From assembly GCF_006345805.1 (NCBI RefSeq), contig NC_043008.1:70184001-70248000 (forward strand): a DNA stretch of 64,000 bases, given 5' to 3'. The DNA comes from Octopus sinensis. Its lineage: Eukaryota. Position numbers and translations under genes: made by a program. Positions 1,067 to 55,400 of this stretch are shown piece by piece (within the stretch, counting starts at the first letter, position 1; each line of letters opens with the position of its first letter). Below the pieces are notes generated by a model. The model did not search any database. It had not been told where the DNA came from and saw only the letters and a list, made by a program, of their open reading frames with translations.

Positions 1067-1374
1067 GGCATCCTTTCTGTCTCGGGAGACAATGGAGTTG
1101 TGCATGAAGTAGTCTAGTCCGGCTTTTATATTTCATGTTCTGATACATTTCCTGCTGTGGCTGTGTAGTCCTATCCTGGACAAACACTCCCTCTGGCAGG
1201 TACCGCAAATGTAGCGAAGACTGTTCCTGGCTGGTTGTAGTGCCATAGTCTCTTGTTTACGTCTCTTCCTTTCTTTCCATTTCTCCTCTCTCTCTCTGTC
1301 ACTCCTTTGTATTCCCTCTTTTACTGTACATCGCCATTCTCCACGGTTGCCGGCAACTGCCTCCCAATCGCTAA

Positions 1375-1375
<1 letters not shown>
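1067..1375 (-). mobile_element. RTE-clade LINE 3' fragment (C-terminal zinc-finger-like region plus 3' UTR)
   Basis: Translation WEAVAGNRGEWRCTVKEG...YICGTCQRECLSRIGLHSHSRKC* fits the RTE C-terminal CxxCxRxCxSRIGLxSHxRxC motif. 3' end CCATTGTCTCCCGAGACAGAAAGGATGCC followed by (AATAC)n/(AAT)n; (AAT)n also lies at the 5' side. Confidence 0.85.
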
Positions 1376-1416
<41 letters not shown>

Positions 1417-1427
1417 CATTATTTATG

Positions 1428-1462
<35 letters not shown>

Positions 1463-1463
1463 T

Positions 1464-1878
1464 AAGATAGCAAGTTGGCTGGCCAAAATGCTCAGTGGCA
1501 TTTCAACCATCTTCACATTTTGAGTTCAAATTCCACCAAAGTTGACTGCCTTTCATCCCTTTGGGGTTGATAAAGTAAGTGCCAGTTGAACACTGAGGTT
1601 GATGTAATTTTACTTATCCCTCCTCTGAAATTGCTAGCCTTGCACCAAAATTTGAAATGATTGTTATTCAGGTGACAAGCTAGCTAAATTGCTAGTATGT
1701 TGGGCAAAATACTTAGTAGTATTTCATCTGTCTTGTTCTGAGTTCAAATTCTGCTGCAGTTAACTTTACCTGTCATCCTTTCAGGGTCGATAAAATAAAT
1801 GCCAGTTGAACACTGAGGTTGATGTAATTTTACTTATCCCTCCCCTGAAATTGCTAGCCTTGTGCTAAAATTTGAGGT
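1464..1878 (+). mobile_element. Two tandem SINE B copies (about 1464-1658 and 1670-1878)
   Basis: Each has GAGTTCAAATT, the CCT(T/G)TCATCC..GGG(T/C)GATAAA domain and an AAAATTTGA end; followed by (ATT)n. Confidence 0.8.
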
Positions 1879-1950: not shown

Positions 1951-2241
1951 GCATCCAGGTTTCTGGTAAATCATACATCGAGAAAGGAGATCCCATCAAA
2001 CTTGTATGCAATACAACTGGCTCAGAATATCCTCCACTGGATCTCGACTGGTTCAAAGATGGCAACAAAATTAATGCCGATTCTGCGAAAAAGATCAAAA
2101 TCGATAAACGCCACTTTCCTCACGCAAACACACTGAGCAGTGTTCTGAATATAACTCACAGTAAAATGTCCGATGCTGGTGAATATGTATGTCGTAGTTC
2201 GAATCTGGAGATAACTAGCATCAAAGTGCATGTACTCAATG
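1951..2241 (+). CDS. Internal coding exon encoding one Ig-like domain, probably the second Ig domain of a Dpr/zig-8-like (IgSF) cell-surface protein
   Basis: Acceptor CTTGTTGTAG at 1941-1950 and donor G|GTAAGT at 2241/2242; 291 nt, phase 1 at both ends, as is typical of Ig exons. Translation IQVSGKSYIEKGDPIKLVCNTTGSEYPPLDLDWFKDG...SVLNITHSKMSDAGEYVCRSSNLEITSIKVHVLN has the Ig Cys, Trp and DxGxYxC motifs. The YxxKGxxIxLxC start and VHVLN end match my recollection of Dpr Ig2 domains. Confidence 0.9.
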
Positions 2242-8776: not shown

Positions 8777-8809
<33 letters not shown>

Positions 8810-8893
8810 TGGCGAGAAACGGAAGAAAATTTGAAGAAAGAAGGAAAAATAATAATGATAATAATAATAATAATGATAATTATAATAATAATG

Positions 8894-8922
<29 letters not shown>

Positions 8923-8924
<2 letters not shown>

Positions 8925-9375
8925 TATGACTGTCCCAATCGATATAAACGTATCTGTCAAGACCTACCAAAAACTGAGCAAATATAAAGATCTTGAAATA
9001 GATATCAGCAAAATGTGGAACCTGAAGACTAAAACAATACCTGTTGTCATAGGTGCCCTGGGAATGATAATGAAAGGGGCTGATTGCTACCTAACTCAGA
9101 TACCAGGAAACCCAAAAATGACAGAAATTCAAAAGATAGTGCTCATTGGAACTGCTCATATCCTATGCAAAATACTCTCTATGTAATCTCAAGGTTTAAA
9201 ACAAACTTTTAAAAAAATTTATTTATTAGACATTCACTAGTACAACACCAAAATAAAACCCAAATATATGGCACACTAGGCATAACAACAATGTGAACTT
9301 CCAAGCTGTTGTCTCTTGAGGTCTCTGGGTGAGACTTGGAGCCAACTTGTACAAACATAAAGCAAAAGTCAAACA

Positions 9376-10420: not shown

Positions 10421-10845
10421 ACTATTATTATTGTTATTATTATTCATGAAGTCAAATGTTGCTAAGATTAGCTGAGATTTCTAAAATATTGAAAGCACTA
10501 CATAAGTTAGATGTGTGCATTCATGTAAAAGAACAAATAAATAGGAAGACAAAAACTCATTCCAAAATTCTTGAGGTTTAATAAAGCTTATCAAGAAAGA
10601 GCAAAGAACTGTGTGAGATACTTGAAATACAAGAAAATATTTTTATAAAAATATAGCAATTAAATCAGTAAGCATAGTGGAAAAAAAAGTTAAGACATTA
10701 TTTCTAAGGTGTCTATTGTGCGTTTGGTAAGTTATTAATAAACTTTTTCATATGTGAGAAAAAGTTGTCCAATGAGGGAAATGGGGAAAAATTGTTCGTG
10801 GTTTTGTGTTGAAGGAAATGTCCTGAGCTTGAAATATGTAGTTAA

Positions 10846-11117
10846 TCATCATCACCATTTAATGTCCATTTTCCATGCTGATATTGGTTAGACTGTTTGA
10901 CTGGAGCTGGTAAGCCAAAGAGCTACATGAAGCTCCAGTTATCTGTTTTGGCTTGGTTTTGTATGACTGGATGCCTTCCTAATGCCAACCATTTTACAGT
11001 GTGTACTGGGTGTCTTTTACAGGTCACTAGCACTGGCCACAATAATGATTTCACTTAGATTGGTGTGTCTTCTCAAGCACCACAGCAAATTGACAGAATT
11101 CTCAGTCACTTGTCAAG
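10846..11117 (-). mobile_element. Family C (GAT)n-tailed non-autonomous retroposon
   Basis: Reverse complement ends ...CCAATATCAGCATGGAAAATGGACATTAAATGGTGATGATG and contains TTAGGAAGGCATCCAG; same family as 11966-12153. Confidence 0.7.
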
Positions 11118-11487
11118 TATTTAGTATTTGTGTGAGTGCATGTATTTGAGATAGGGGCTAGGACCTCCACTTGATAATAGCTGCTATAAATGTTGGTTGG
11201 TTGAAATTCTCTAGTCATGTTTTGCATCATACAGAAAGGTGATGGAGATGGAGAGTAAATGAGGGCACTGCACTGAAAGTCACTCACCTGATGACATGCA
11301 GATACACAACTACTGCTGGATTATATTTATGTGAAAGTTTTATTATTTGTATAATATGGAAAACTCAGCAACTAACAGCTGTTACTAATGCACAGAAACA
11401 AGTGTTGCATTTCTGATTAAAGCCTGTTCATTCTGTCTTTGTTGATATATATATATATGCCTATATATATATATGCATATATATATA

Positions 11488-11804
11488 TATATATACCAAT
11501 TAAGGACTGAACACGAAAAGGTGGACAGTCAACATGCTAGATATAGACGTCAAATCGCCATTCTCCACAAAGATTTGTTCTCAAATAAAAATAAAATTCA
11601 GCACGACCTAAAGCAATGGATGAGACAAAAGAAAAATACTAAATTCCATTTAGTATTTTTCTTTTGTCTCATCCATTGCTTTAGGTCGTGCTGAATTTTA
11701 TTTTTATTTGAGAACAAAATCTTGTGGAGAATGGCGATTTGACGTCTATATCTAGCATGTTGACTGTCCACCTTTTCGTGTTCAGTCCTTAATTGGTATA
11801 TATA
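11488..11804. repeat. Near-perfect 317-bp palindrome (157-bp arms, 3-nt loop TCC at 11645-11647)
   Basis: Positions x and 23292-x are complementary throughout except a homopolymer shift (AAAGATTT versus AAGATTTT) at 11571-11573/11719-11721. Embedded in (TA)n. Confidence 0.95.
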
Positions 11805-11879
11805 AATATTTTAATCTTCGGATTCTTTTAATGTGCTAGACCACTGGTTTTAATTGACTAATATCAATTTCTACCCTTA

Positions 11880-11885
<6 letters not shown>

Positions 11886-11965
<80 letters not shown>
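11886..11965. repeat. (TA)n microsatellite
   Basis: Directly visible. Confidence 0.95.
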
Positions 11966-11968
<3 letters not shown>

Positions 11969-12153
11969 GGTGGCACGTAAAAAGCACCCACTACACTCTC
12001 GGAGTGGTTGGTGTTAGGAAGGACATCAAACTGTAGAAACTCTGCCAGATCAAGACTGCAGCCTGGTGCAGCCATCTGGTTGCCAGCCCTTAGTCAAAAC
12101 CATCCAACCCATGCTAGCATGGAAAACGGACGTTAAACGATGATGATGATGAT
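11966..12153 (+). mobile_element. Family C retroposon, 3' part with (GAT)n tail
   Basis: GGTGTTAGGAAGGACATCAAACTGTAGAAAC...CAACCCATGCTAGCATGGAAAACGGACGTTAAAC(GAT)n. RTE dependence is inferred only. Confidence 0.8.
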
Positions 12154-12241
12154 ATATATACAGAAGAACTTCAATTTTCGAACAACTCCGATCATGAATA
12201 AATTGTACTTTATCTCCTGTCTTTCTTATATTCATTTAATA

Positions 12242-12375
12242 CAGTAGTACCTCGGTTTACAAATGTTACTGATCACAAATAAACCGTGCTTTATATATGT
12301 CTATATCTATCTATATGTATACATAAAGCATGATTTATTTGTGATCAGAGATGTTCGAAAACTGAGGTACTACTG
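12242..12375. mobile_element. Tc1/mariner-pogo (Tigger-like) MITE with TA target-site duplication
   Basis: About 54-bp imperfect TIRs starting CAGTAGTACCTC and ending GAGGTACTACTG; TA at 12240-12241 and 12376-12377. Confidence 0.85.
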
Positions 12376-14544
12376 TATATATATATATATATATATATAG
12401 TAATAGTAATAATAATGATAGTCCATGAGATGGAATTTATGAATATTTAATGCATCACTATGTACCTTTCCACAAACTACGCTTCTTAAGATCATAGTCT
12501 ATATTCCTGAGATGATTTCAGTACAGTTCATATGTATGTGTGTGAGTGTGTGTATGCATATTTATGTATACATATGTATGTCTGTGTATGTGTGTGTATA
12601 TATACATATATATATATGTGAGTGTGTATATATATGATGAATGAGCAAAAACTAGAAAAATACAAGTTTTCAGAAAGGTGTCATTAGTCTCACACTTGAT
12701 AAGAAAAGGGAGAAGTGTCTTTGATATTTTGCACATTAGAGTCCTCCATCTGGAAAAAGAAACAAAAACAGGTAATGGATAGGAGTGAAGATGAAAGAGA
12801 AAAAATGTTTAGGGGCTGAGTGGAAAAGCAGTTCTGTGAGCTGGAGATAAGGTGTATATATATATGTGCATGTGTGTATGTATGTATGTATGTATGTATG
12901 TATGTATATATGTGTATATATATATATATACATAGTATGTCCTGTACTCTGTTTTTTCTGTTGTAAAAAAATGTTTTTTCTGTTTTCGTTTCTCGTTGAG
13001 TTCTACGTCTAGTTGTGGTGTCCTGTACTCATGTGTATATATATTCATATATGCATGTATATATACATGTAGATGTAGGTACGTACATATATGTTTGTAT
13101 GTATGCATATATTTTATTTATTACACTATATATATATATATAATCATCATCTTCATTTAATGTCTGTTTTCTATGGTGGCATGAGTTGGATGGTTTAACA
13201 TGACTTTTAAAAAAAATTTTGGGAGGTAGAGAAAGATGGATTGCAGTTATGATGATGTAGGGTATCTGGGACTGGATGGGAGAATGAAACAAAGAGAGGA
13301 ACTCATGGGTTGTGATCTTCATATCAGAAATTGGTCTCTACTAAATTTTTCTCAGGGACAGATGTTGGTGTTAAGCCAGGCAAAAAATTAAATCTACTGC
13401 CTCTGTCCATTAACAAAGAAAACACAGACATAGAGAAATTCTTCCAAGTGAAACTGGGTATAAAGAGATTATGAAGGAACCTACTCCTAGTGGACTCCCT
13501 CATAATCTCCCTATACTCAGTTTCTCTTGGTATCCTTGATTCATCCCAAGGCTGTGGTAGATGTTTGCTCAAGGTGCCACATAGTAGGGGTTGAATACAG
13601 AATATATGTAATTGCCAAATAAATTTAACAACATCATGTTAATGTCTCTGCCCTATTGGCATGCACATATGAAGGTTTGAAGAGTTGGCTAAGTGATCTG
13701 ACAAGAACGACTTCAATCTAATATACATTAAAATATAATGGTTTCTTTCCTCTGCATATTGAATTTAACTTATAGAGGGTTTCCTGTTGATCTATGTCTA
13801 TCTAGGTACACTAAAATAAATACCAGTAATATACTGTGAACTACTTAATCCATCATATGTCCTTTCCACCATACAATAGATTATTTTCATCTACCTCACC
13901 ATAAATATAAACAAACAAACAAAAATATGTCAATAACAAATTAATTAGAAGTATTTATTGTTCTGGGGGAAAATCTAAACTGGAGAATTTGGTACACACT
14001 TCGTTGGAAGCTTGTTCTGCAGTATTTGTTACCTATGTCAGATTACACAAATATATAGGTACTGTGACTGGCCCCCTGCCAAAATTATTGCTGAGCACCA
14101 TAATATAATGTAAACATTATTGCTGTGTAGCTGGAGGTGTGCTGTTTCAAATAAACGAACTGTTTAAGAATTAGGCCAAGGTTTCACGTCTAAATATTTT
14201 CGAAACCACATACTTACTTAACAAAGAATCATTAAAAGTCATATAGTACAATGAGGAATTAATTAATACCGAATAATTTCTTTGTTTTTCTATTTTTGCA
14301 ATTCTTTAATTAATGCATTGGCATTCTTTCTTAGGAAGACACTAGTTTGTTTCTTGTGTAATTTAAGAAAACTAATGTCTACACAAAACGGAACCGAGTC
14401 TGGTTCAGATTTCTTCTCAGAAAGTACTCTCATTTCAAATCCATTTAGCATAGAACTTCTGAAAGTTAATCCCTGCTAGAAATGGTTTCATTGTTGCTGT
14501 TATTGCTACTGCTGTTGTTGTTGTTGTTGTTAATACTGTGAGGG

Positions 14545-18571: not shown

Positions 18572-18702
18572 TCATCATCACCATCATTATCATTATTTAA
18601 CATCTGTTCTCCATGCTAGCATGAGTTGGACATTTTGACAGAAGCTGACCAGCTGTTCAGGCTCCATGCCTGTTTTGGCATGGTTTCTATGGCTGGATCC
18701 CC

Positions 18703-22145: not shown

Positions 22146-22989
22146 ATTAATTGTGGCACTCTGTAAAAATTATTAAGATATTTCCAGTGTGCTGATTATC
22201 TCTTAAAATTCTGTTCTTTAATGTAATTTCTTAATGTTCACAGACCATTTAAGTTGTCAGTAAACAAGAAACATTTAAATTAGTATGTTTTCTAAGCAAT
22301 ATGGAAGTAAATAGTGAAGCAATGTCATTACTGATTCTGATGATGAGCCTTCAAAAAGAAGTAATTATGTCTAACTCAATCTTCCATATTTGTTGCTGAA
22401 ATAGTATTAGATATCGATGACCATGTTCACATCCCACTGAAGTCAACTTGGCCTTTCGTTGTTTTTGGGTTGATAAAATATGTACTTGGGTCTGTTCTCC
22501 AACAAATTTCCAGTTCTTGTGCCAATGCTAGAAACAATTATTTTTATCTTGACCACTTATTTCAGCCATTTATCTGAATATATTTTAGCTTTTTGATGTT
22601 TTAATCAGTAAAAGTGCTATCATTTACATAACATTCATCATTTTAGCTTGTCTAGTTTCACTTCTTATATAGTTGATTGAGATTGATAAAACTGTCTTGA
22701 GATGCTGACTAAATATTAACAATTGACACATACATTTCTGTAAGTCTGTTGCCTGGCTTTCCTAGAACATATTTAGATATTGGAGCAGAGTTCCAAGTAA
22801 ATAAAATCCAAACTCATAAATTAACATTTGGTGGCTTAAATAAGAATGAAAAATGAAATCATTTAATGAGGAGATATGGAAAGGTTTTTGAGATAATCAT
22901 TTATATTTTGTCAAAAGAAAGAAAGCTCTACAAGACATGGAACAAGCAAATATTTTATCAAAATGTAGGTTTGATCTGATCAACTATAA

Positions 22990-23300
22990 TCATCATTATC
23001 ATCATTTAGCGTTCATTTTCCATGCTGGCATGGGTTGGATGGTTTGATACGGTCAGCCGAGGAGTGTCCAGAGTTTAATTGTCTGTTGTGGCATGCTTTC
23101 TCATTCCACTTGTCTGTTGTGGATGCTCTTCCTAATGCCAACCACTTTACTGAATGTGCTGGATGCTTTTTATGTGCCACTAGTATAGGTGCATTTATGC
23201 ATCACTGGCATGATTGTATTTTATGTAGCACCAGCACCTGTAAAGGACAAGCTTGTATGTATGGATGACTGATTTTACTTAACTTGGCATATCTTAGAGC
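22990..23300 (-). mobile_element. Family C retroposon with short internal subrepeats
   Basis: (CAT)n, TTTTCCATGCTGGCATGGGTTGGA, GATGCTCTTCCTAATGCCAACCAC, then repeated GCTTTTTATGTGCCAC-like units. Confidence 0.75.
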
Positions 23301-28733: not shown

Positions 28734-29289
28734 CTTTTGCACAGTGAACTAAGGTAATACCTCTTATTTTTCGAGCACTTTCCAAGCTGTGCTGTTTTCT
28801 GCAAGTGCTCCACTCTTATTGCAGCTCCTATTTGTTCCATGTACTTCTTGAGATTTTTGTTCACTGTTCCCAGCTCTGACAATTATTGGTACTACAACTA
28901 CCTTTTCTATCAATCACAACTGCTTAACTTTCTAAGCTAACCTGTCATATCTCTCAACTTTTCTTTCTTCCTTATCGCATACCTTGTTGTCTGCTGGGCA
29001 TGCTATCTTTATTATCCAGCATAGTTTGTTTTCTTTCTCAATTAAGACTATATCTGGCTTCCTATTCTCAATCTGATGGTCGCACTGAATCATAAAATCC
29101 CATAGGAACTTTGCTTTTTTATTTTCAATAATACCTTCGGGTTTGTGATCATCCCAATTTTTGCTCTGTCAAGTCCATACTTGTTGCAAAGTGTCCAATG
29201 GGCAAGCCTGGCTATATTGTCGTGGCATCTCTTATATTCCTTCAGGGCTAGTGGCGTACATTGGCTGGTAATATGCCATATGGTTTCAC

Positions 29290-29290
<1 letters not shown>
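28734..29290 (-). mobile_element. 5'-truncated R4/Dong-clade LINE (zinc-knuckle remnant, RLE domain, short 3' UTR), a different subfamily from 8923-9377
   Basis: GETIWHITSQCTPLALKEYKRCHDNIARLAHWTLCNKYGL...LGTVNKNLKKYMEQIGAAIRVEHLQKTAQLG...KVLEK* with frameshifts; (TAA)n on both sides in the sense orientation. Confidence 0.85.
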
Positions 29291-29331
<41 letters not shown>

Positions 29332-29334
29332 GGA

Positions 29335-29880
29335 CATTGGAGAGGCTGAAAGTTTCAAGCACTACACAAAATTCCTTGCAGTATTGTGGTATTTATTCTG
29401 GCACTTTTTATTCTGAATTAAAACCCTGCTGAGGTCAACTTTGCTGTTCATCCTTTTGGGGTCAATAAAATGAAATGCTGGTCAACAACTAGGGCCAGTG
29501 ATACCAACTAGCCCTGTCCCTCAATTCTGTTTGTCTTGTGCCTTAATTAAAATTTCTATCAGGGTTGTGAGTTGTTAGAAATAACAACTGCAACATCAAC
29601 AACAACTACTACTGCTACTGCTTTTATCCATCCCTCAGGGTTGATAAAATGAAGTGCCAGTCAAGTACTGGTTGCAATGATATCAACTTATCCCTTCCCC
29701 TCAAAAATGTTGGACTTCTCTTGAAAACAGAAAACATTATTATTATTATTAAGTTTAAAAGGCTGCAAGCTGGCAGAATTGTTAACATACTGGACAAACA
29801 GCTTAGTGACATTTCATCTGTATTTATGTTCTGACTTCAAATTCTGCTGAGTTTGACTTTATCTTTGCCTTTCATCCTGT
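29335..29880 (+). mobile_element. Further SINE B copies (about 29335-29545, 29625-29735 partial, 29760-29880)
   Basis: Family B motifs with ATT spacers. Confidence 0.7.
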
Positions 29881-40895: not shown

Positions 40896-41981
40896 ATTTT
40901 ACTTGTTTACACATTTCATACATGCAGCTGCGGCCATGTTGGAGCACCACTGTGGTCTTTCTGATTTCCTCAGTCTGAGGTGTTTCACATCACCACCCCT
41001 GTAAGTGCCCTTGTCCCAGCTGTTGGTTCATTTAGTGTATAATGGAGTTTGATTCCGCTGCCCTCGTCTGTACCTCAAGTCAGGCTGTTGGTTCATCTGG
41101 TATTGTGGAGAGGAGGATGTCTAGTTCCTTTTTGAAGACATCTATTTCCACCTTATGCAGATTTCTTAATTTTTGCAGTAGGGCATTGAAGAGCTGTGCG
41201 CCTTTGAACCCTTGACTATTGCAATATCTGGTACTGAATTTAGATGGAGTGGATGGTACCTTTGGTATAATAAAATGACGGCCAGTTCTGGCATTTGTAT
41301 AACAGTCAATGTCAAAGTAAAGTACTAGCCCTTCTACGATTTTCCATATGTATATTATTGCATATTTCTCACGCCTTCATTCCAGAGAGTAAAGTTGCAG
41401 TTTTCTCAGCCTATCCCTGTAGCTCATCCACTGTAATGTTTCAATCTTTTTAGTGTAGTGGCGTTGGACTGCTTCAAGCTCTGCTGTTAGTTTGGCCCTA
41501 TGTAGTGACCACAACTGGGAGCAGCAGTCCAAGTGACTGAGAACAAAGGTTTTCCACAGGGTCAACATAGTTTCTTGGTCTCTTATCTTGAAGGGCCTCA
41601 GTATCCACCCTGCTAGTTGTCTGCTCTTTGCTTCCATCTTGGTAATGTGCATAGGAAATAATGTGTCATTGCACATACTGGTCCCCCATGTCTTTCACTG
41701 CCTGTGACTCTGGGAGTGTAGTGCCTTCAGGTCCTATAAATGTAAATTGTACTGTATTTGGGAGTTGATAGTGCAGTGCTTGAAATTATCTAGCATTAAA
41801 CTGCATGTTGTTTATTTCAGTCGCCTTCCATATCAAATTCAGATCCTGTTGTAAGCTTGTGATGTCATCTTGATTTTTAATTTGCCTGTGATAATTTTGT
41901 GTCATCAGCATAGCTAGTGACAGTGGCTTTGGGCATATCTAAGAAGGCTATTATGGACAGTAATAGCCCCAGAACAGTTCC
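40896..41981 (-). mobile_element. 5'-truncated CR1-clade LINE (3' 1.1 kb), abutting a truncated SINE A head (40818-40883, +)
   Basis: GTVLG...SYADDTKLSQ RT motif, ETMLTLWKTFVLSHLDCCSQLWS...LRKLQLYSLE region; 3' tail GTGGTGCTCCAACATGGCCGCAG...AAACAAGTAAAA. Confidence 0.88.
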
Positions 41982-44039: not shown

Positions 44040-44667
44040 CACTATATTTATTAGTTATATGCACAGCATATTTAATACAAGATGGAAAAAGTATACACAC
44101 ACACACATTCATGTGTGTATATGCATATGTAATGTATGTGTCTCTACACACACAAGTTCACACTTGTGGTGGTAGCTAATAAAAAAAATGAATTCTTTGT
44201 TGTTTTAGAAGAGAACCAAAACATTTTTTTGTGGAAGGTAAATAAATATCAAAAGACGTATGAAATATCAAGCTGTGGTTGTTGGAGAATGTTACATAAT
44301 GCATTAATAGAAGGAGCAGGAGTGATCAGGTTTCAATACTGGCTAATTATCATATCAGGTGTAAACGTCTTTTTTATACAAGACAGTTGACATTAATGAA
44401 CACGTCCTTGCTTGGTAAAAATATCATCTTACACTCTATGTCGTACATATCTACATTGATCTGGGTTAAGGTGCTGAACGAGAATGTTCCATGTGAGATG
44501 TTGAAGTCATCACTGCATGCTAATGAGCGTTTGCCTTGAAGGGTTGTTCTGCAAGGGTGAGTGTTAAGAAAACATAGAATCTGTCAGCTAATAGGGTTGA
44601 TTGTTTTATTTCCACCAGTATTTGTAGCTTTGTGCCCACACACACCACCACCACCACCACAACCACT

Positions 44668-44930
44668 ATCATCATCATCATCACTTGGCATCTGTTCTCC
44701 ATGTTGGTATGGGTTAGATGGTTTGAATGGAACTGGTAATCTGGGGAGCTGCACCAAGCTCCAGTCATCAGTTTTTTTGGCTTGGATTCTATGGCTGGAT
44801 GCCTTTCCTAATGCCAAACACTCCATAGAGTGTACTGGATATCTTTTATGTGTCACTGGCACAGGTGCCTTTTATATGTCACCGACACTGGCCACGACTA
44901 CAATTTCACTTAGATTGACATGTCTTCTCA
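44668..44930 (-). mobile_element. Family C retroposon
   Basis: (CAT)n, TCCATGTTGGTATGGGTTAGA, GGATGCCTTTCCTAATGCCAAAC and internal TTTTATGTGTCACTGGCAC subrepeats. Confidence 0.75.
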
Positions 44931-45160
44931 ATCAAATCACCAGTCCTCATTATAATCACTTCAACATTTGCATTTACATGGGATTCATTTATGCAGGTTT
45001 TCTACAGCTGAATGCTCTTCCTGTCACTAAACCATTACCTATTTCCAAGCAAGGCGATATTTACCCATGGCCAGACATGATTCCCATTGAAGACTGGAAA
45101 CAAACGGTATTGCTTGACAGCTATACTTGTTTGCTACCATCATGTAATATCAAGAGAAGA

Positions 45161-45325
<165 letters not shown>

Positions 45326-45553
45326 TACAATAGGCACATGCATACATAGACATACATACAACAGGTTTCTTTTCCTTTCCATCAACCAAATCCATTCACA
45401 GGGCTTTGGTTGGCTCAGGGCTTAGCACCCAGCAGATTCTGTAAAGTGATTGGTGTTAGGAAGGGCCTCTAGCTGCAGAAACATGCTACAACAGACAATT
45501 GGATTCTGGCCAGCTCCCCGGCTGGCTAGCTCCTGTCAAACTGTCAAACCCAT

Positions 45554-47186: not shown

Positions 47187-47368
47187 GCTGAGCAATATCA
47201 CTTTATTTCCTTGTAATATTTGGTAACAGTAACCACATCGGATACACACACATACACACATATGTGTCGCTGTATAATATATGTATATTATATGTTTAAA
47301 TGTTAACATTATAAATGCATATATTGTCAACATATGATACCATGTTTATGTGTGTGTATATGTATTTA

Positions 47369-47762
47369 CATCATCATCATCTGACATCCATTTTCCATAC
47401 TGGCATGGGTTGGACAGTTTGAGTGAAAACTGGTAAGCTGTTGAGCTGCACCAGGCTGCAATCTGATTTGGCTTGGTTTCTACAGCTGGGTGCCTGCCCT
47501 TCCTAATGCCAACCACTCTAAGAGTGTACTGTGTGCATTTTATAAGCCACCAGCATGGCTACTAGTTACATAACACCGGCATTGGCCATGACTATGATCT
47601 CACTTAGCTTGACAGCACGGTATATCACCAAAGAACTTGGTCACTTGTCACTGCCTCTGTGAGGCCCAAAGAAGTTCTTAGGATGCTTTTTATATGTCAC
47701 TGGCATGGGTGCCAGTGACCCGACACTGACATTGACCATGACTAGAATTTCGTTTGGCTTGA
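47369..47762 (-). mobile_element. Long family C copy with a diverged internal duplication
   Basis: (CAT)n tail at 47369; two related blocks containing GGCCATGACTA/GACCATGACTA near 47584 and 47733. Confidence 0.75.
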
Positions 47763-47810: not shown

Positions 47811-47926
47811 ATATATATGAATATATATATGTATATATATATATATATATATATTATATATTATAATATATATATTTATATATATATTATAATATATATA
47901 TAATATATTATATATATATATAGATA

Positions 47927-47963
<37 letters not shown>

Positions 47964-48026
47964 TTATATATTATTTATATATATATATAATATATATATA
48001 TATATTTTATATAATATATTTATATC

Positions 48027-48098
<72 letters not shown>

Positions 48099-48654
48099 AT
48101 AATCTAGTTATATATATATTTTATATAGAATTTATATATAGATTTATATATATATTTATCTATATATGTATTTATATATTATATATAGATGTATATATAT
48201 ATATATTATAGATAATATTATTATATATATATATATTTATAATTATTATATATATATATAATATTATATATAGATTTATATATATATAATATTTATATAT
48301 ATAATAGATATATATATATGTATATTTTTATTATATATATATAATATATGTATATTTATATTTATATATATATATTTATATATATATATATTTTATATAT
48401 ATATATATATATTTTATATAATATATGTTATTATATATATATATTATATTATATAATATATTTATATATAGTATATATTATATATAGATGTATATATATT
48501 ATTAGATATTATTTATATATATGTATATATATATATGTATATATATATTTATATATATTTATATGTATATATATAGATATATATATATATATAAGATATT
48601 ATATATAGTTATATATTATATTATATATAATTATTATATATTTATATATATATT

Positions 48655-48689
<35 letters not shown>

Positions 48690-48751
48690 TATATGTAATA
48701 TATATAGATATATATAATATATTTATATATATTTATATATATTTATATATA

Positions 48752-48796
<45 letters not shown>

Positions 48797-48945
48797 TTAT
48801 ATCTATATATCTATATATATATCTATATATATATATATTTATATTATATATGTATATATATATATTATTATATATTATATATATATATTTATATATATAT
48901 ATATTATAATATTTATATATATAATATATATATTTATATATATAT

Positions 48946-49042
<97 letters not shown>

Positions 49043-49249
49043 ATATAATATATATATATTTTATATAATATATATATATATATATTATTATATATTATAT
49101 TATATATAATATATTTATATATATATATAATATATATAATATATATATATTTATATATATATTATTTATATATATATATAGTTATATATATAATATATGT
49201 ATATATATATATATTTATATATATATATTTATATATAATATTTATATAT

Positions 49250-49285
<36 letters not shown>

Positions 49286-49442
49286 TATAATTTATTATAT
49301 ATTATATATATGTATATGTATATATATATATTTTATATATGTGTTTATATATATGTATATATATATATATATATTTATAGTATATATGTTATATATATTA
49401 TATATATATATTTATATATGTATATATATATATTATAATATT

Positions 49443-49479
<37 letters not shown>

Positions 49480-51069
49480 TTATATATATTTATATATATA
49501 TATTTATATATATGTATATATATATATTTATATATATTTATATATATATATTTATATATATTTATATATATATATTTATATATATGGTTATATATATATA
49601 TTTATATATATTTATATATATATATTTATATATATGTATAATATATATATTTATATATATTTATATATATATATTTATATATATTATAATATATATATTA
49701 TATATATGTATATATATATATTTATATATATTTATATATATATATTTATATATATGTATATATTATATTTATATATATTTATATATATATATTTATATAT
49801 AGGTATATATATATATTTATATATATTTATATATATATATTTAATATATGTATATATATATATTATAATATGTTATTATATATATATTTATATATATTTA
49901 TATATATATATTTTATATATGTATATATATATATTTATATATATTTATAGATATATATATTTATATATATGTATATATATATTTTATAATGTATATATAT
50001 ATATTTATATATATGTATATATATATATTTATATATATGTATTTATATATATGTATATATGTATTATATATATTTATATATATATATTTATATATATGTA
50101 TATATATATATATTTAATATATGTATATATATTAATTTATATATATGTATATATATATTATATATATGTATATATATATATTATATATATGTATATATAT
50201 ATATTTATATATATGTTATTATATATATTTATATATATGTATATATATATATTTATATATATGTATATATATATATTATATATATGTATATATATATATT
50301 ATATATATGTATATATATATATTTATATATATGTATTTATATATATTTATATATATGTATATATATATATTATAATATTGTATATATATATATTTATATA
50401 TATGTATTTATATATATTTATATATATGTATTTATATATATTTATATATATGTATTTATATATATTTATATATATGTATATATATATTTATATATATGTA
50501 TATATATATATTATATATATGTATATATTATTATATGTATATATATTTATATATTATATATATATATGCGTATATATGTTTATATATATGCGTATATATG
50601 TTTATATATATGCGTATATATGTTTATATATATGCGTATATATGTTTATATATATGCGTATATATGTTTATATATATGCGTATATATGTTTATATATATG
50701 CGTATATATGTTTATATATATGCGTATATATGTTTATATATATGCGTATATATGTTATATATATGCGTATATATGTTTATATAATGCGTATATATGTTTA
50801 TATCTATGCGATAATGTTTATATATATGCGTATATATGTTTATATATATGCGTATATATGTTTATATATATGCGTATATATGTTTATATATATGCGTATA
50901 TATGTTTTTATATATGCGTATATATGTTTATATATTTGCGTATATATGTTTATATATATGCGTATATATGTTTATATATATGTGTATATATGTTTATATA
51001 TATGCGTATATATATTTATATATTTATATATATTATATAGATATATTTATATATCTATATATATATTTA

Positions 51070-51104
<35 letters not shown>

Positions 51105-51139
51105 ATATATTAATAATTTATATATATATATATATAATA

Positions 51140-51180
<41 letters not shown>

Positions 51181-51266
51181 ATTATTATATATATATATAT
51201 TATATATTAGATATATATTATATATATATATTATATATATATAATATATATTATATATATATAATA

Positions 51267-51320
<54 letters not shown>

Positions 51321-51483
51321 ATATATATATTATATATATATACTATATTATATATATTATATATATTATTATATAATATATATTTATTATATATATATAG
51401 ATTATATTTATAATATATATATATATATATATATTTATATTATAATATATATATATATATATATATAGTATATATATATATAT

Positions 51484-51549
<66 letters not shown>

Positions 51550-51566
51550 TTATATATATATATATT

Positions 51567-51600
<34 letters not shown>

Positions 51601-51675
51601 ATAGCTATATATATTTAATGTATATTATATATATATTTATATTATATATATATTATATATATATATCGATATTTA

Positions 51676-51736
<61 letters not shown>

Positions 51737-51985
51737 ATATTCATATATATTTATATTTATATATATATATATATATTTATATTTATAATATATATATAAT
51801 TATATTTATATTTATATATATATATATATATAATTTATATGTTATATTATATTATATATTATTATATTTATATAATATATATATTATTTATATTTATAAT
51901 ATATATTATATATATTTATATTTATATATATATATATATAATATATATATTTATATATATATATATATATATATTGATATTATAA

Positions 51986-52017
<32 letters not shown>

Positions 52018-52040
52018 ATATATAGATAATATATTTATAT

Positions 52041-52079
<39 letters not shown>

Positions 52080-52099
52080 ATTATATATATATATATTTA

Positions 52100-52144
<45 letters not shown>

Positions 52145-52197
52145 ATATATATATTATATATTATATTATATAATATATATATATATATTTATATTTA

Positions 52198-52230
<33 letters not shown>

Positions 52231-52253
52231 ATATATATATATATATATAGTTA

Positions 52254-52285
<32 letters not shown>

Positions 52286-52410
52286 TTATTTATATATATA
52301 TATATATATATTTATATTTATTATAATATATATATAATATATATATATATTTATATTTATATATATATATAATATATTTATATTTATATATTATATATAT
52401 ATATATATAT
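47811..52410. repeat. 4.6-kb (TA)n-derived array with higher-order sub-arrays (22-bp unit GCGTATATATGTTTATATATAT at about 50560-51010; 24-bp unit near 50380-50480)
   Basis: GCG recurs every 22 bp (50568, 50590, 50612, 50634...); the ORF track shows 22-aa and 8-aa periodicity. Confidence 0.95.
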
Positions 52411-55400
52411 CCTTAAATCCTTAAAAATGTTTAGCCCGAAGGCCGCGGCCATGCTGGGGCACCACCGCTGAATGAGCTACACTAGTTTGTGAATCCACCT
52501 CTGATACGTGGCACTTGATCAACAAGGGAGTTCGATGCTGCTGCCCGCATCCGTGTCTCCTGTCGTGAGGTAGGTTCATCTGGGACTCCCAACAAGAAGA
52601 GATCAGTTTAGTTTTAAAGAAACCCACATCCACACCATGTAAGTCTCTCAGGCATTTAGGGTGGATGTTAAAGAGCTGTGGTCCTCTGAAACCCAAGCTG
52701 TTGCAGTATCTGGACCTGTATTTTGATGGTGATGTGTGGAATCCTTGGCACCACGCAGCGGCGCCCCGTTCTGCGGTTGGAATAACTTTGAATGCCAAAG
52801 TTTGGGACAAGACCCTCCAGGATTTTCCAGATGTATATCACTGCATATCTCTCCCGCCTCCGCTCCAGGGAGAAGAGGTTTAATACCTTCAGTCTTTCCC
52901 AGTAGCTGACATTTTGCATTGAGACGATTTTCTTTGTGTAGCTTCTCTGAGTTGCTTCGAGTTCTGCTGTTTGTTTTATATTGTGTGGTGACCAAAGTTG
53001 GGAGCAGTAGTCCAAGCGGCTGAGGACAAATGTTTTCCATAGGACCATCAGTGTCTCCTCTCTCTTGTTCTGAAAGTTCGGAGAATCCATCCAGCTAGCC
53101 GTCTGCATTTTATCACCAGATTAGCAATATGCATTTGGAAAGATGCATCATTGCTCATGTCAATGCCCAGGTCACGCACTGATTTTGACTCAGGGATTGC
53201 AATTCTTTCTGGGCCAGTGTATCCAGTCTTCACGTCATTTACCTTTGTGTGCCAGTAGCGCAGGCCTGGAACTTACCTGCATTAAACTGCATGTTGTTGT
53301 CCTCAGCCCACCTGATATTGTGTCCAGCTCATGTTGCAGATGCGCAATATTTTCAGGGTTTTGTATTGCGTGGGAGACTTTTGTGTCATCTGCATAGCTA
53401 GCAAGGGTGGTCATCGTAGCAATTGAAGGCATGTCTGAAAGGGCCACTATGAACATCAGTGGCCCCAAGACAGTGCCCTGTGGGACACCGCTTGCTATTT
53501 GTGTTTCCCTGGAGGTGGCTCCATTGCTCACAACTGCCTGTTTTCTGTCTTTTAGGAAGTTGTGCAGCCACTCTCCAAGTTTCCCGCCTATGCCGAGACC
53601 ACGCAGTTTGTGACAGATCATACCATGGTCGACTTTATCAAAGGCTTTTGCAAAGTCAAGATATATTACATCCACATTTGAGCCATTTAGTAGCTGTTTC
53701 AACACCCAGTCATAGTGTTACAGGAGCTGTGTTAGGCAGCCTCTACCTGGTCGAAATCCATGCTGGGTGTCAGACAGTAAGTCATTTTCTTCAAGGAACA
53801 TGATTAGTTTCTTACGGACTATTCGTTCCATGACTTTGCTGATGTGTGAGGTCAGAGAGATAGGCCTATAATTTTAGCATCTGCTCTGCTACCTCCCTTA
53901 TGGATAGGGCATATTACCCCCTCTTTCAGTTTGACTGGGAGCTTACCACTTGCAAGAAAGCTCTGAAAAGAAAAAGAAGCTGTAGCGGTTTTGCAAGGGC
54001 TCGTTTGCACGATTTGAGAAGGATCGCTGGGAATCCATCAGCGGTCCAGCAGCTGAGTTTGTGTCAATCTCATCAATGGCTGTGTGATATCATCTTCTCG
54101 ATGTTGATGTACTCAATTTTTGTCTCTTTGGCCGCTGGTAAAGTGGCAAAGAATTCTTCTGGGTTGTTTACTTGCCTGTGTCCTAGAGGTGTAGTGAACA
54201 CACTTTGGAACTGTTCGTTCAGTATTTCACTTATCCTCGTGGGATTTCCTGTGAGAGAGCCATCTTTTTGGAAGAGAGGTCCTATTCTCTGGTGCACTGT
54301 GGCTGTCTCTTTGGCAAACTTAAAGAAAGCTCTAGGGTTTGATTTTATATTTCTATTACCCAAGCTTCTTTATCTGCTCTCTCCTTTTCATGGGACTGAT
54401 GTAGACTTTTCTCAGTTTCCATTAGCATTCTTTCGAGCCGAGACTTCTCACCACTTTTGGTGTGCTTGCTCAGGCGGTTTGCAATCCTTGTCCGTCGTCT
54501 CATAAGAATCCTCCTTTCTCTAGGGATCCTGTTTTTGTTCTTGGTGTGCTGGCCCTGCACATTGGGACATATTTGTCACATATGGCTTGTATTATGGACA
54601 TGAAGTGTTTGTGTTTCATGTTTATGTCCGGTGTGGAGAGACATTCAGGCCAATCTTGTTTGAGGATCTCTTTCTCAATCGACTTCCAGTTGGCTTTATG
54701 AAAGTTAAGTTGGAGAGATGGTAGGTGCTTCGTATAGGCTGTGTGTCTGCTGGGGCTTTTGTTCCATACATAGACAGCTCTATTATGTTGTGATCCGAGA
54801 TCATTGTCGGCATCACATTAACATATGGATAATATCCATATTGTTTGTGAAGCAGAGATCCAGTATATTATCTGCCCTTGTTGGTTGCAGAACTATTTGC
54901 TCCATGAAAGAGGTATTTGTGAGATGGAGCAGGGACTCCACCTGTGCCTGCTGATGGTGTGTCATCCCTGGGAGCATCTGCCCCCAGGCCATTCCACATT
55001 GGGGAGGTTAAAGTCACCCATGAAGAATACACTGTTGTGCTGTTCAAGGTTGGTGAGGACTTCTCCTACTTTTGTTAGGCAGTCTTCAAACATGCCTGAG
55101 TGTTTTGGGGCGTCTGGTGGGCGAATGTAGTGCATATGACGATATTCAGTTGTCTTATGTGTACAATTTGAGTTTCACATACTGAGTTTGAATATGACAG
55201 CAGGACCTGGGGCGTGAGGTCATCTCGGATGTACATTGCAACTCCACCATGGCTCCTCCCTTTTCTATCTGTGCGTATGACTGCATATTGCGGCATGTGT
55301 ATTTCTGCATCACCTATATCGGGTCAAGATGCTTTCTGTGAGTGCCATGCATATAGCTTGATTGCATGTCACAAGGTCTCTCAGGAATGAAATTTTCTTT

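What the first reader, a model, noticed from the sequence alone, without database searches (positions are those of the whole stretch)
11488..11885. Near-perfect 317-bp palindrome with a 3-nt loop, about 9 kb downstream of the Ig exon (probably intronic)
157-bp arms differ only by one compensated homopolymer shift. The right arm continues for 81 bp of unique sequence (11805-11885) before (TA)n, so the structure looks like a roughly 240-bp element whose end was copied back on itself, not a symmetric MITE. Such fold-backs arise during retro-integration (inverted partial copies are known for Penelope-like elements) or by template switching. Long perfect palindromes are unstable, so it is either very young or selected. 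If transcribed it would give about 157 bp of dsRNA, a strong ADAR/Dicer substrate in a lineage known for extensive A-to-I editing (inference). One arm is open in frame for about 50 codons (YQLRTEHEKV...).
Basis: partly seen in the sequence, partly recalled or inferred. Interest (0 to 1): 0.7.

Follow-up and report, generated by a model that had tools for sequence, protein, structure and literature searches.

The report
Young 317-bp DNA palindrome beside TA repeat
A real-looking, almost perfect 317-bp DNA palindrome sits next to a TA microsatellite, probably in a long intron of an immunoglobulin-domain gene. It is most likely a recent local copy-back (template-switch) duplication, a known kind of mutation, not a new kind of element.

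Summary
The arms are 11488-11644 and 11648-11804 (157 nt each) around a 3-nt loop (TCC). They pair perfectly for 83 bp and 71 bp. One 3-position discordance separates these blocks (AAAGATTT vs AAGATTTT).

The structure is far beyond chance. The next best non-repetitive short-spacer palindrome in the window has 17-nt arms, and shuffles give 12-14.

Neither the arm nor the tail that follows it has another copy in the 64 kb. No protein, Pfam, Rfam (above threshold), plasmid, phage, metagenome or prokaryote-genome relative was found. The open frame in the arm is not unusual and has no homologues.

The outer 8 nt of both arms are TATATATA, and the left arm abuts a (TA)n tract. That fits two origins equally well:
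- microhomology-guided template switching in place;
- a TA target-site duplication of a palindromic MITE.

I favour a young in-situ fold-back or template-switch inverted duplication (about 0.5). The rivals are a young palindromic MITE copy (about 0.25) and a library or assembly artefact (about 0.12).

The palindrome lies 9.2 kb downstream, on the same strand, of an internal Ig exon with a GTAAGT donor, so an intronic position is plausible but unproven. The dsRNA, ADAR and Dicer consequences are inference only. No outgroup or independent reads could be reached. Interest is modest.

The parts
11445..11495 (.). Left microsatellite, (TA)n with GC interruptions (16-mer ATATATATATATATGC x 2.9). Its last 8 nt (11488-11495) are also the outer end of the left arm.
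   Evidence: Tandem Repeats Finder; sequence.
11488..11644 (.). Left arm of the palindrome (157 nt: TATATATA plus 149 nt of unique sequence starting CCAATTAAGG).
11571..11573 (.). Left side of the only discordance between the arms (AAAGATTT here, AAGATTTT in the other arm). It pairs with 11719-11721.
   Evidence: It shows as one bulged base per arm in the folds.
11645..11647 (.). Centre of symmetry, the 3-nt loop TCC. The central 41 nt are 80% A+T.
11648..11804 (.). Right arm of the palindrome (157 nt, ending CCTTAATTGG plus TATATATA).
11805..11884 (.). Unique A+T-rich 'tail' between the right arm and the next TA tract. It has no other copy in the window. It ends CCTTAATT + TT + (TA)n, echoing the arm end CCTTAATT + GG + TATATATA.
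11885..11965 (.). Right microsatellite, (TA)40 with two GC interruptions.
1951..2241 (+). Context: an internal immunoglobulin-domain exon (291 nt) with a polypyrimidine tract and AG acceptor and a GTAAGT donor. The palindrome lies 9.2 kb downstream on the same strand.
   Evidence: Pfam Ig_3 / I-set; sequence; similarity to relatives stops at 2244-2247; relatives.

Best explanation
This is a young inverted duplication made in place by a fold-back (template-switch) replication or repair error next to a TA microsatellite. The proposed course, which is inferred, is as follows. A strand being synthesised through the present right arm came off its template near 11645-11648. It looped back on itself, or jumped to the opposite strand, with a minimal 3-nt turn, and copied about 150 nt in reverse-complement sense. 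When its 3' end reached the self-complementary TATATATA at the outer end of the arm, it re-annealed to the neighbouring (TA)n tract and normal synthesis resumed. The result is a source arm (right arm, continuous with the unique tail) and a new copy (left arm) that abuts (TA)n. The one compensated shift in short A and T runs is either an error of the low-fidelity copying step, a later slip, or a consensus error. The palindrome has no demonstrated function. As DNA it should be prone to hairpin or cruciform formation and so be polymorphic or short-lived. If it is transcribed with the Ig-domain gene, it would form about 157 bp of intramolecular dsRNA.
For: Shown: the reverse-complement copy is immediately adjacent to its source, with a 3-nt turn and perfect blocks of 83 and 71 bp. 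Both arms end in the self-complementary TATATATA and the left arm runs straight into (TA)n, which gives microhomology exactly where a return switch is needed. TA tracts are very frequent here: 41 tracts of 12 nt or more outside the satellite block. The arm and the tail are single-copy in the 64 kb. They have no relatives in protein space, Pfam, plasmids or phages, or by exact 24-27-mers in metagenome, prokaryote-genome and viral contigs. The composition of the arms (65% A+T) equals the window's (67%), as expected for local DNA. Literature: template switching makes perfect hairpins in one step, by an intrastrand loop-back or an interstrand jump, also at sites with no earlier repeat; events of 28 and up to 83 bases are documented (PMC10710096). 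Inverted repeats of only 5-9 bp with 3-12-bp spacers can seed snap-back duplications (PMC7999016). Argument: transposition copies both arms as they are and does not make them alike, so near-identity means the palindrome itself was formed recently, and formation in place needs one step fewer than formation elsewhere followed by transposition. No substitution in 2 x 149-157 nt gives an upper bound of about 2.7 My, if the octopus calibration of JC 0.09 = 25 My (PMC13282606) applies.
Against: No ancestral or empty state was seen, because no outgroup, second haplotype or read set could be reached. The copied stretch (149-157 nt) is about twice as long as the longest template-switch events cited. 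The same TA ends fit a TA (or 4-, 6- or 8-bp) target-site duplication of a transposon. An 8-mer (CCTTAATT) recurs 2 nt from a TA run at the end of the tail, which the model does not explain. Which arm is the source is inferred only from continuity with the tail. Single copy in 64 kb is weak evidence, because the neighbouring MITE-like element also has no copy elsewhere in the window.
Confidence: 0.5

Rival explanations
1. It is a recent insertion of a fully palindromic non-autonomous DNA transposon (a MITE or foldback-type element, 11496-11796, 301 bp) into a TA tract, with a TA target-site duplication. The arms would be its terminal inverted repeats, and the tail would be plain host DNA.
For: The size (about 300 bp), the A+T richness, the sharp ends and TA on both sides all fit. 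A clear TA-flanked palindromic element with CAGT ends lies 430 bp away at 12242-12375, plus a solo arm at 12156-12213, so such elements live in this genome and land in this neighbourhood. That element also has no distant copy in the window, so the lack of copies in 64 kb does not argue against a TE. Recently active Tc1-mariner and MITE-like insertions are reported in Octopus vulgaris, including 65 'MITE families' with one insertion each (PMC13282606).
Against: The palindrome runs on through the supposed duplication for 8 nt on each side, and any even-length 'duplication' is automatic inside a TA tract, so the target-site duplication carries no information. The termini (CCAATTAAGG) do not resemble the CAGT ends of the neighbouring element. 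The arms are 98-100% alike, against 79-81% in the neighbour, and transposition does not explain that. No other copy or fragment was found anywhere searched, although none of those collections appears to hold this species.
Confidence: 0.25
2. It is an artefact: a fold-back chimera made during library preparation or amplification (polymerase snap-back) and carried into the consensus. A milder version is that the palindrome is real and only the compensated A/T-run shift is a consensus error.
For: Paired +1/-1 differences in neighbouring short homopolymers are typical of long-read consensus errors. Palindromes are hard to sequence and polish. The window resolves a 4.5-kb TA-rich array, which suggests a long-read assembly.
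Against: Strand-read-through chimeras of long-read platforms give arms as long as the read, not 157 nt embedded between two different unique flanks. A consensus built from many reads should outvote a single chimera. No other such palindrome exists in the window. The window has no gaps or N.
Confidence: 0.12
3. It is a retro-integration fold-back: a 5'-truncated retroelement copy (Penelope-like, LINE or SINE 3' end of about 240 bp with a (TA)n tail) whose cDNA end self-primed and was copied back.
For: The right arm and tail end in a simple repeat, (TA)40, as some non-LTR tails do. LINE remnants in the window also adjoin TA-rich arrays.
Against: There is no similarity of the arm or tail to any other sequence in the window, including its LINE and SINE-like copies. 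There is no reverse-transcriptase or other protein homology. No target-site duplication brackets the 389-bp unit other than TA repeats.
Confidence: 0.06
4. It is a selected hairpin-RNA locus: a long hairpin kept because its transcript feeds Dicer (endo-siRNAs) or ADAR.
For: A near-perfect 157-bp stem on the sense strand of a gene. Many sub-threshold Rfam hits to miRNA precursor models.
Against: The Rfam hits fall on both strands, go to unrelated (mostly plant) families and all lie far below the gathering scores, which is what any perfect hairpin gives. No homology to a possible target gene was found. The only difference between the arms breaks pairing instead of preserving it. Molluscs are reported to respond to dsRNA by apoptosis and to lack extended miRNA hairpins (PMC12553114). 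Identity is explained by youth alone.
Confidence: 0.05

Closest known systems
Template-switch mutations (TSMs) that create perfect hairpins in one step (Loytynoja & Goldman 2017; Monttinen et al. 2023, PMC10710096)
   Same: A reverse-complement copy lies directly beside its source with a minimal turn, the stem is perfect at birth, and the site is non-coding DNA.
   Different: The copied stretch is 149-157 nt here, against tens of bases (28 to 83) in the cited cases. No ancestral state is available to prove the event. The return point lies in a TA microsatellite, a context those studies filter out as simple repeat.
Fold-back inversions / snap-back inverted duplications after breaks or fork stalling (yeast and human; PMC7999016, PMC7467729, PMC10622511)
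   Same: A 3' end is primed on itself through a tiny inverted repeat with a 3-12-nt spacer, which gives a palindromic junction.
   Different: Those events usually yield kilobase-to-megabase duplications or dicentric chromosomes. Here the copy is 150 nt and the strand returned to its template, leaving a small interstitial insertion.
Human palindromic AT-rich repeats (PATRR8, 11, 17, 22)
   Same: Near-perfect palindromes of 200-600 bp, several of them in introns, each unique in sequence, prone to forming cruciforms and polymorphic.
   Different: PATRRs are more than 90% A+T. This one is 65-68% A+T, the same as its surroundings. Instability or translocation is untested here.
Palindromic MITEs with a TA target-site duplication (Tc1/mariner-derived), such as the neighbour at 12242-12375
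   Same: A few hundred bp, hairpin-forming over the whole length, and flanked by TA.
   Different: No second copy was seen, the termini are different, the arms are almost identical rather than diverged, and the flanking TA is uninformative inside a TA tract.
Drosophila hairpin-RNA (hpRNA) loci and young plant MIR genes born by inverted duplication
   Same: A long, near-perfect inverted duplication that would give a Dicer- or ADAR-grade dsRNA if transcribed (for hpRNA literature).
   Different: Those are inverted copies of a target gene and are defined by their small RNAs. Here no target homology was found and no expression data could be consulted.

Membership tests
Template-switch / fold-back inverted duplication | A reverse-complement copy contiguous with its source, with a short turn. 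| tested here: met
   Arms 11488-11644 and 11648-11804 with a 3-nt loop, pairing at 154 of 157 positions.
Template-switch / fold-back inverted duplication | Microhomology at the switch or return points. | tested here: inconclusive
   TATATATA at both outer ends and (TA)n at the left junction fit. But TA repeats are self-complementary and abundant, so the match is not specific.
Template-switch / fold-back inverted duplication | An ancestral or allelic state with the source only. | not testable with these tools
   The nearest relatives share only the exon at 63-70% identity and no intron similarity. No reads or second assembly were available.
MITE / foldback DNA transposon | Terminal inverted repeats. 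| tested here: met
   Trivially met, since the whole unit is an inverted repeat.
MITE / foldback DNA transposon | A target-site duplication distinct from the element. | tested here: inconclusive
   TA, TATA, up to TATATATA on both sides. This is indistinguishable from the palindrome itself and from the TA tract.
MITE / foldback DNA transposon | Multiple dispersed copies. | tested here: inconclusive
   None in the 64 kb and none in the collections searched. Those collections appear to lack this species, and the control MITE next door also has no distant copy in the window.
Palindromic AT-rich repeat (PATRR-like) | A near-perfect palindrome of several hundred bp. | tested here: met
   317 bp, 98%.
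Palindromic AT-rich repeat (PATRR-like) | More than 90% A+T. | tested here: not met
   65% (arm) to 68% (whole) A+T, against 67% for the window. Criterion taken from PMC7999016.
miRNA / described structured RNA family | A match to a curated covariance model at its gathering score. | tested here: not met
   There are 0 hits at gathering thresholds. Only sub-threshold hits on both strands to unrelated miRNA models, for example 71 bits against a threshold of 100.
hpRNA / endo-siRNA locus | Small RNAs of 21-23 nt from the stem, and arm homology to a target gene. | not testable with these tools
   No expression data. The homology part was tested and is negative.
Penelope-like or other retroelement with an inverted partial copy | Sequence belonging to a retroelement family (RT or GIY-YIG coding, or a shared 3' end). 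| tested here: not met
   No protein or Pfam match for the arm. No similarity to the window's LINE or SINE-like copies.

The most novel reading that the evidence does not exclude
A single template-switch event two or more times longer than those catalogued in primates has just created, inside an intron of an Ig-domain gene of a mollusc-like genome, a 157-bp perfect hairpin that is transcribed. It would already act as a strong ADAR and/or Dicer substrate: a caught-in-the-act birth of a long hairpin-RNA locus, possibly kept by selection or by arm-to-arm correction despite the instability of its DNA.
Probability: 0.07. Interest if true: 0.6.

Novelty: new member of a known kind. Interest (0 to 1): 0.3.

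Why it matters
If real and formed in place, this is a clean and unusually long example of one-step hairpin birth by template switching at a TA microsatellite. It would make a convenient natural marker for three questions:
- How long such palindromes survive in an animal germ line.
- Whether TA tracts seed these events.
- What the RNA machinery (ADAR, Dicer) does with a brand-new 157-bp intronic duplex.

If it is a MITE or an artefact, it is routine. Either way it does not point to a new kind of genetic element.

Tried and rejected
**Searches for another copy, all empty**
- Second copies of the arm or tail in the window: none (blastn word 7).
- Protein-space relatives of the arm's open frame. 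The indexed search found nothing. The exhaustive phmmer search gave one hit to a 3527-aa protein that is 20% E and 18% K, repetitive, matched in 14 stretches at 22% identity. I rejected it as compositional. Pfam found nothing.
- Exact 24-27-mers of the arm in metagenome, prokaryote-genome and viral contig collections: 0 hits.
- Vector, plasmid or phage origin: no match.

**Attempt to reach an orthologous locus through the Ig exon**
- The best relatives are 63-64% identical.
- Their contigs (L001-L004) share only the exon with the window and no intron or repeat DNA.
- No presence/absence test was therefore possible.

**Attempt to name the organism**
- The RT fragment search gave only unnamed hits of 74% identity or less.
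- A literature search for the sample accessions found nothing.

**Ideas considered and rejected**
- Known RNA families: no hit at gathering score. The sub-threshold miRNA-model hits are generic hairpin scores. There are no tRNA genes nearby.
- Similarity between the tail and the arm, which would make the tail an old third copy: not above shuffles, apart from the terminal 8-mer.
- A second Ig exon downstream, which would prove an intronic position: none detectable with an HMM built from the exon family.
- A parvovirus-like terminal hairpin or a transposon excision footprint: no adjoining viral or transposase coding sequence, and the length does not fit.

Full report
**1. The observation**

The sequence at 11488-11804 is a near-perfect palindrome, as described.
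- The repeat finder reports arms 11483-11644 and 11648-11809: 162 nt, 98% complementary, 3 nt apart.
- Base-by-base extension gives three parts. An outer perfect block, 11488-11570, pairs with 11722-11804 (83 bp). Three discordant positions, 11571-11573, face 11719-11721. An inner perfect block, 11574-11644, pairs with 11648-11718 (71 bp), around the loop TCC (11645-11647).
- With gaps allowed, the discordance is one A fewer and one T more, two bases apart: CACAAAGATTTG against CACAAGATTTTG. The arm lengths stay equal, but the stem gets one bulged base on each side.
- The outer 8 nt of each arm are TATATATA. The non-repeat part of each arm is 149 nt and starts CCAATTAAGG.

Chance is excluded.
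- The fold is -183 kcal/mol as DNA and -265 kcal/mol as RNA, with z-scores of about -41 against dinucleotide shuffles.
- Outside low-complexity DNA, the next best perfect short-spacer palindrome in the window has 17-nt arms. Shuffled sequence gives 12-14 nt.
- All the other long inverted repeats of the window lie in a TA-rich satellite-like block at 47.9-52.4 kb.

**2. Surroundings**

- To the left, the arm runs straight into a TA microsatellite with GC interruptions (11445-11495).
- To the right, the arm is followed by about 75-80 nt of unique A+T-rich sequence, then (TA)40 at 11885-11965. After that comes a SINE-like repeat at 11966-12160, which has at least six other full or partial copies in the window.
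- TA tracts are very common here: 41 tracts of 12 nt or more outside the satellite block.
- About 430 bp downstream lies a second, clearly older palindromic element: TA|CAGTAGTACCTCGG...CTGAGGTACTACTG|TA at 12242-12375, with arms 79-81% alike. A third, solo arm copy sits at 12156-12213. It looks like a Tc1/mariner-type MITE.
- That neighbour serves as an internal control. Such elements exist in this genome, their arms diverge with age, and they too can lack further copies within 64 kb.

**3. Gene context**

- The only recognisable coding exon is an Ig-domain exon on the + strand, matching Pfam Ig_3 and I-set.
- It has a polypyrimidine tract and AG acceptor near 1950 and a GTAAGT donor at 2242.
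- Similarity to the nearest relatives, at 63-70% identity, stops at 2244-2247.
- An HMM built from that exon family finds no second Ig exon in the window.
- The 10 kb downstream of the related exon on contig L001 shares nothing with the window.
- The donor shows that the transcript continues downstream, so the palindrome, 9.2 kb further on the same strand, is plausibly intronic. This is an inference, not a demonstration.
- The organism could not be named. The protein hits are unnamed and distant, and the sample accessions appear in no paper held. That the repeats look octopod-like is my recollection only.

**4. What the arm is not**

- Neither the arm nor the tail has another copy in the window.
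- It has no Pfam family and no relative in the indexed protein search.
- The exhaustive search returned only an E/K-rich repetitive giant protein, which is a compositional match.
- Rfam has no hit at gathering scores.
- With relaxed thresholds the stem collects sub-threshold hits on both strands to many unrelated, mostly plant, miRNA precursor models. The neighbouring MITE does the same. This is the generic score of any long hairpin.
- There is no plasmid or phage match.
- No exact 24-27-mer match exists in the metagenome, prokaryote-genome or viral collections. Those collections do not seem to hold this species, so the negatives exclude contamination or vector origin and say nothing about copy number in the host genome.

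**5. Most likely mechanism**

The identity of the arms means the palindrome itself is young. Transposition copies a unit as it is and does not make its two arms alike, and the neighbouring MITE shows what age does (79-81%).
- No substitution is seen in 2 x 149-157 nt.
- If the published octopus calibration applies (Jukes-Cantor 0.09 = about 25 My; PMC13282606), the 95% upper bound is about 2.7 My.
- This ignores arm-to-arm correction and assumes an octopus-like lineage, which is unverified.

The simplest origin is formation in place by template switching. A growing strand leaves its template near the present centre. It loops back on itself or jumps to the opposite strand, copies about 150 nt in reverse-complement sense, and returns.
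- The return point is where the evidence fits best. The arm ends in TATATATA, which is self-complementary, and the new copy joins a (TA)n tract.
- Template switching is documented to create perfect hairpins in one event, by an intrastrand loop-back or an interstrand jump, even where no repeat existed before. Events of 28 and up to 83 bases are described (PMC10710096).
- Inverted repeats of 5-9 bp with 3-12-nt spacers can seed snap-back copying (PMC7999016).
- The event proposed here is about twice as long as those. That is a difference of degree.
- The compensated shift in two short homopolymers could be an error of low-fidelity copying, a later slip in the hairpin, or a consensus error. I cannot tell which.

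Shown: the adjacency, the turn, the TA ends, and single copy in the window. Inferred: the order of events, which arm is the source, and the kind of polymerase error.

**6. Rivals**

- A young palindromic MITE inserted in the TA tract (about 0.25). It fits the size, the composition and the flanking TA, and the neighbourhood holds a true example. However, inside a TA tract any even-length 'duplication' is automatic, the palindrome runs through it, the termini differ from the neighbour's CAGT ends, and no second copy was seen.
- An artefact (about 0.12). Paired homopolymer shifts are typical consensus errors. But platform fold-back chimeras give read-length arms, not 157 nt set between two different unique flanks, and nothing else like it occurs in the window.
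Nothing links the arm or tail to any retroelement.
- A selected hairpin-RNA locus (about 0.05). The only difference between the arms disrupts pairing, no target homology exists, and molluscs are reported to lack extended miRNA hairpins and to respond to dsRNA by apoptosis (PMC12553114).

**7. Consequences (inference)**

- As DNA, this is a 157-bp stem with a 3-nt spacer and an 80% A+T centre. That is the class of palindrome expected to stall forks, extrude cruciforms and be rearranged. Longer, more similar arms and shorter spacers raise the risk (PMC7999016). I therefore expect polymorphism and centre-deleted derivatives in the population.
- Long near-perfect palindromes are rare but not unknown. 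718 longer than 200 bp are reported in the human genome, mostly intronic or intergenic.
- As RNA, if the intron is transcribed, the + strand would fold into a duplex long enough for promiscuous ADAR editing or for Dicer. No expression data could be consulted.

**8. Comparison and verdict**

- It works like a template-switch or fold-back inverted duplication.
- It resembles human PATRRs in size, perfection and intronic setting, but it fails their defining composition: 65-68% A+T, the same as the surrounding window, against more than 90%.
- It cannot be filed as a MITE, because copy number and target-site duplication are inconclusive.
- It is not a member of any described RNA family.
- It is a new instance of a known kind of mutation, unusually long and unusually clean, and of modest interest unless reads and RNA data show that it is real, polymorphic and processed.

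Noticed in passing
window 12156-12380: An older palindromic MITE-like element: TA|CAGTAGTACCTCGG...CTGAGGTACTACTG|TA at 12242-12375 (134 bp). Its arms are about 79-81% alike with a 6-nt spacer. A third, solo arm copy lies at 12156-12213, directly after the (GAT)n tail of the SINE-like repeat. No further copies occur in the window.
   Followed up: partly
window 11966-12160 (+); also 47357-47554, 44667-44856, 10845-11020 (all -) and partial copies near 22985-23045, 13133-13196, 18582-18639: A SINE-like interspersed repeat of about 195 bp ending in (GAT)n, present in at least seven full or partial copies at 70-89% identity. ARAGORN finds no tRNA and Rfam finds no hit.
   Followed up: partly
window 47900-52400 and 52400-55100: A 4.5-kb TA-rich satellite-like block that reads as YIYIYI in translation and holds many 150-280-nt inverted and direct repeats at 70-82%. 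It directly adjoins LINE reverse-transcriptase remnants on the - strand (RVT_1, 53235-53705). This suggests a hugely expanded simple-repeat tail of a LINE, or a satellite seeded there.
   Followed up: no
window 11498-11505, 11787-11794, 11874-11881: The 8-mer AATTAAGG / CCTTAATT sits exactly 2 nt from a TA run three times: at the outer end of both arms and again at the end of the unique tail. Overall the tail is not similar to the arm. Unexplained: it could be a relic terminal repeat or a recurrent microhomology site.
   Followed up: partly
window 1951-2241 (+): An Ig-domain (Ig_3 / I-set) exon with canonical splice signals. The closest proteins in a 5.8-billion-protein collection are only 63-64% identical and unnamed, so the gene and the species seem absent from that collection.
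   Followed up: partly
window 1133-1516 (-), 8809-9186 (+), 29090-29362 (-), 41377-41676 (-), 52668-53108 (-): Scattered open frames that look like C-terminal pieces of non-LTR retrotransposon proteins, several next to long homopolymer-codon runs (N, I, L). Only 53235-53705 scored a Pfam RT domain.
   Followed up: no
window 45150-45330: A long (CT/GA)n-type microsatellite that reads as (SL)n in translation, followed by (CA/TG)n. It is one of many dinucleotide arrays in this window.
   Followed up: no
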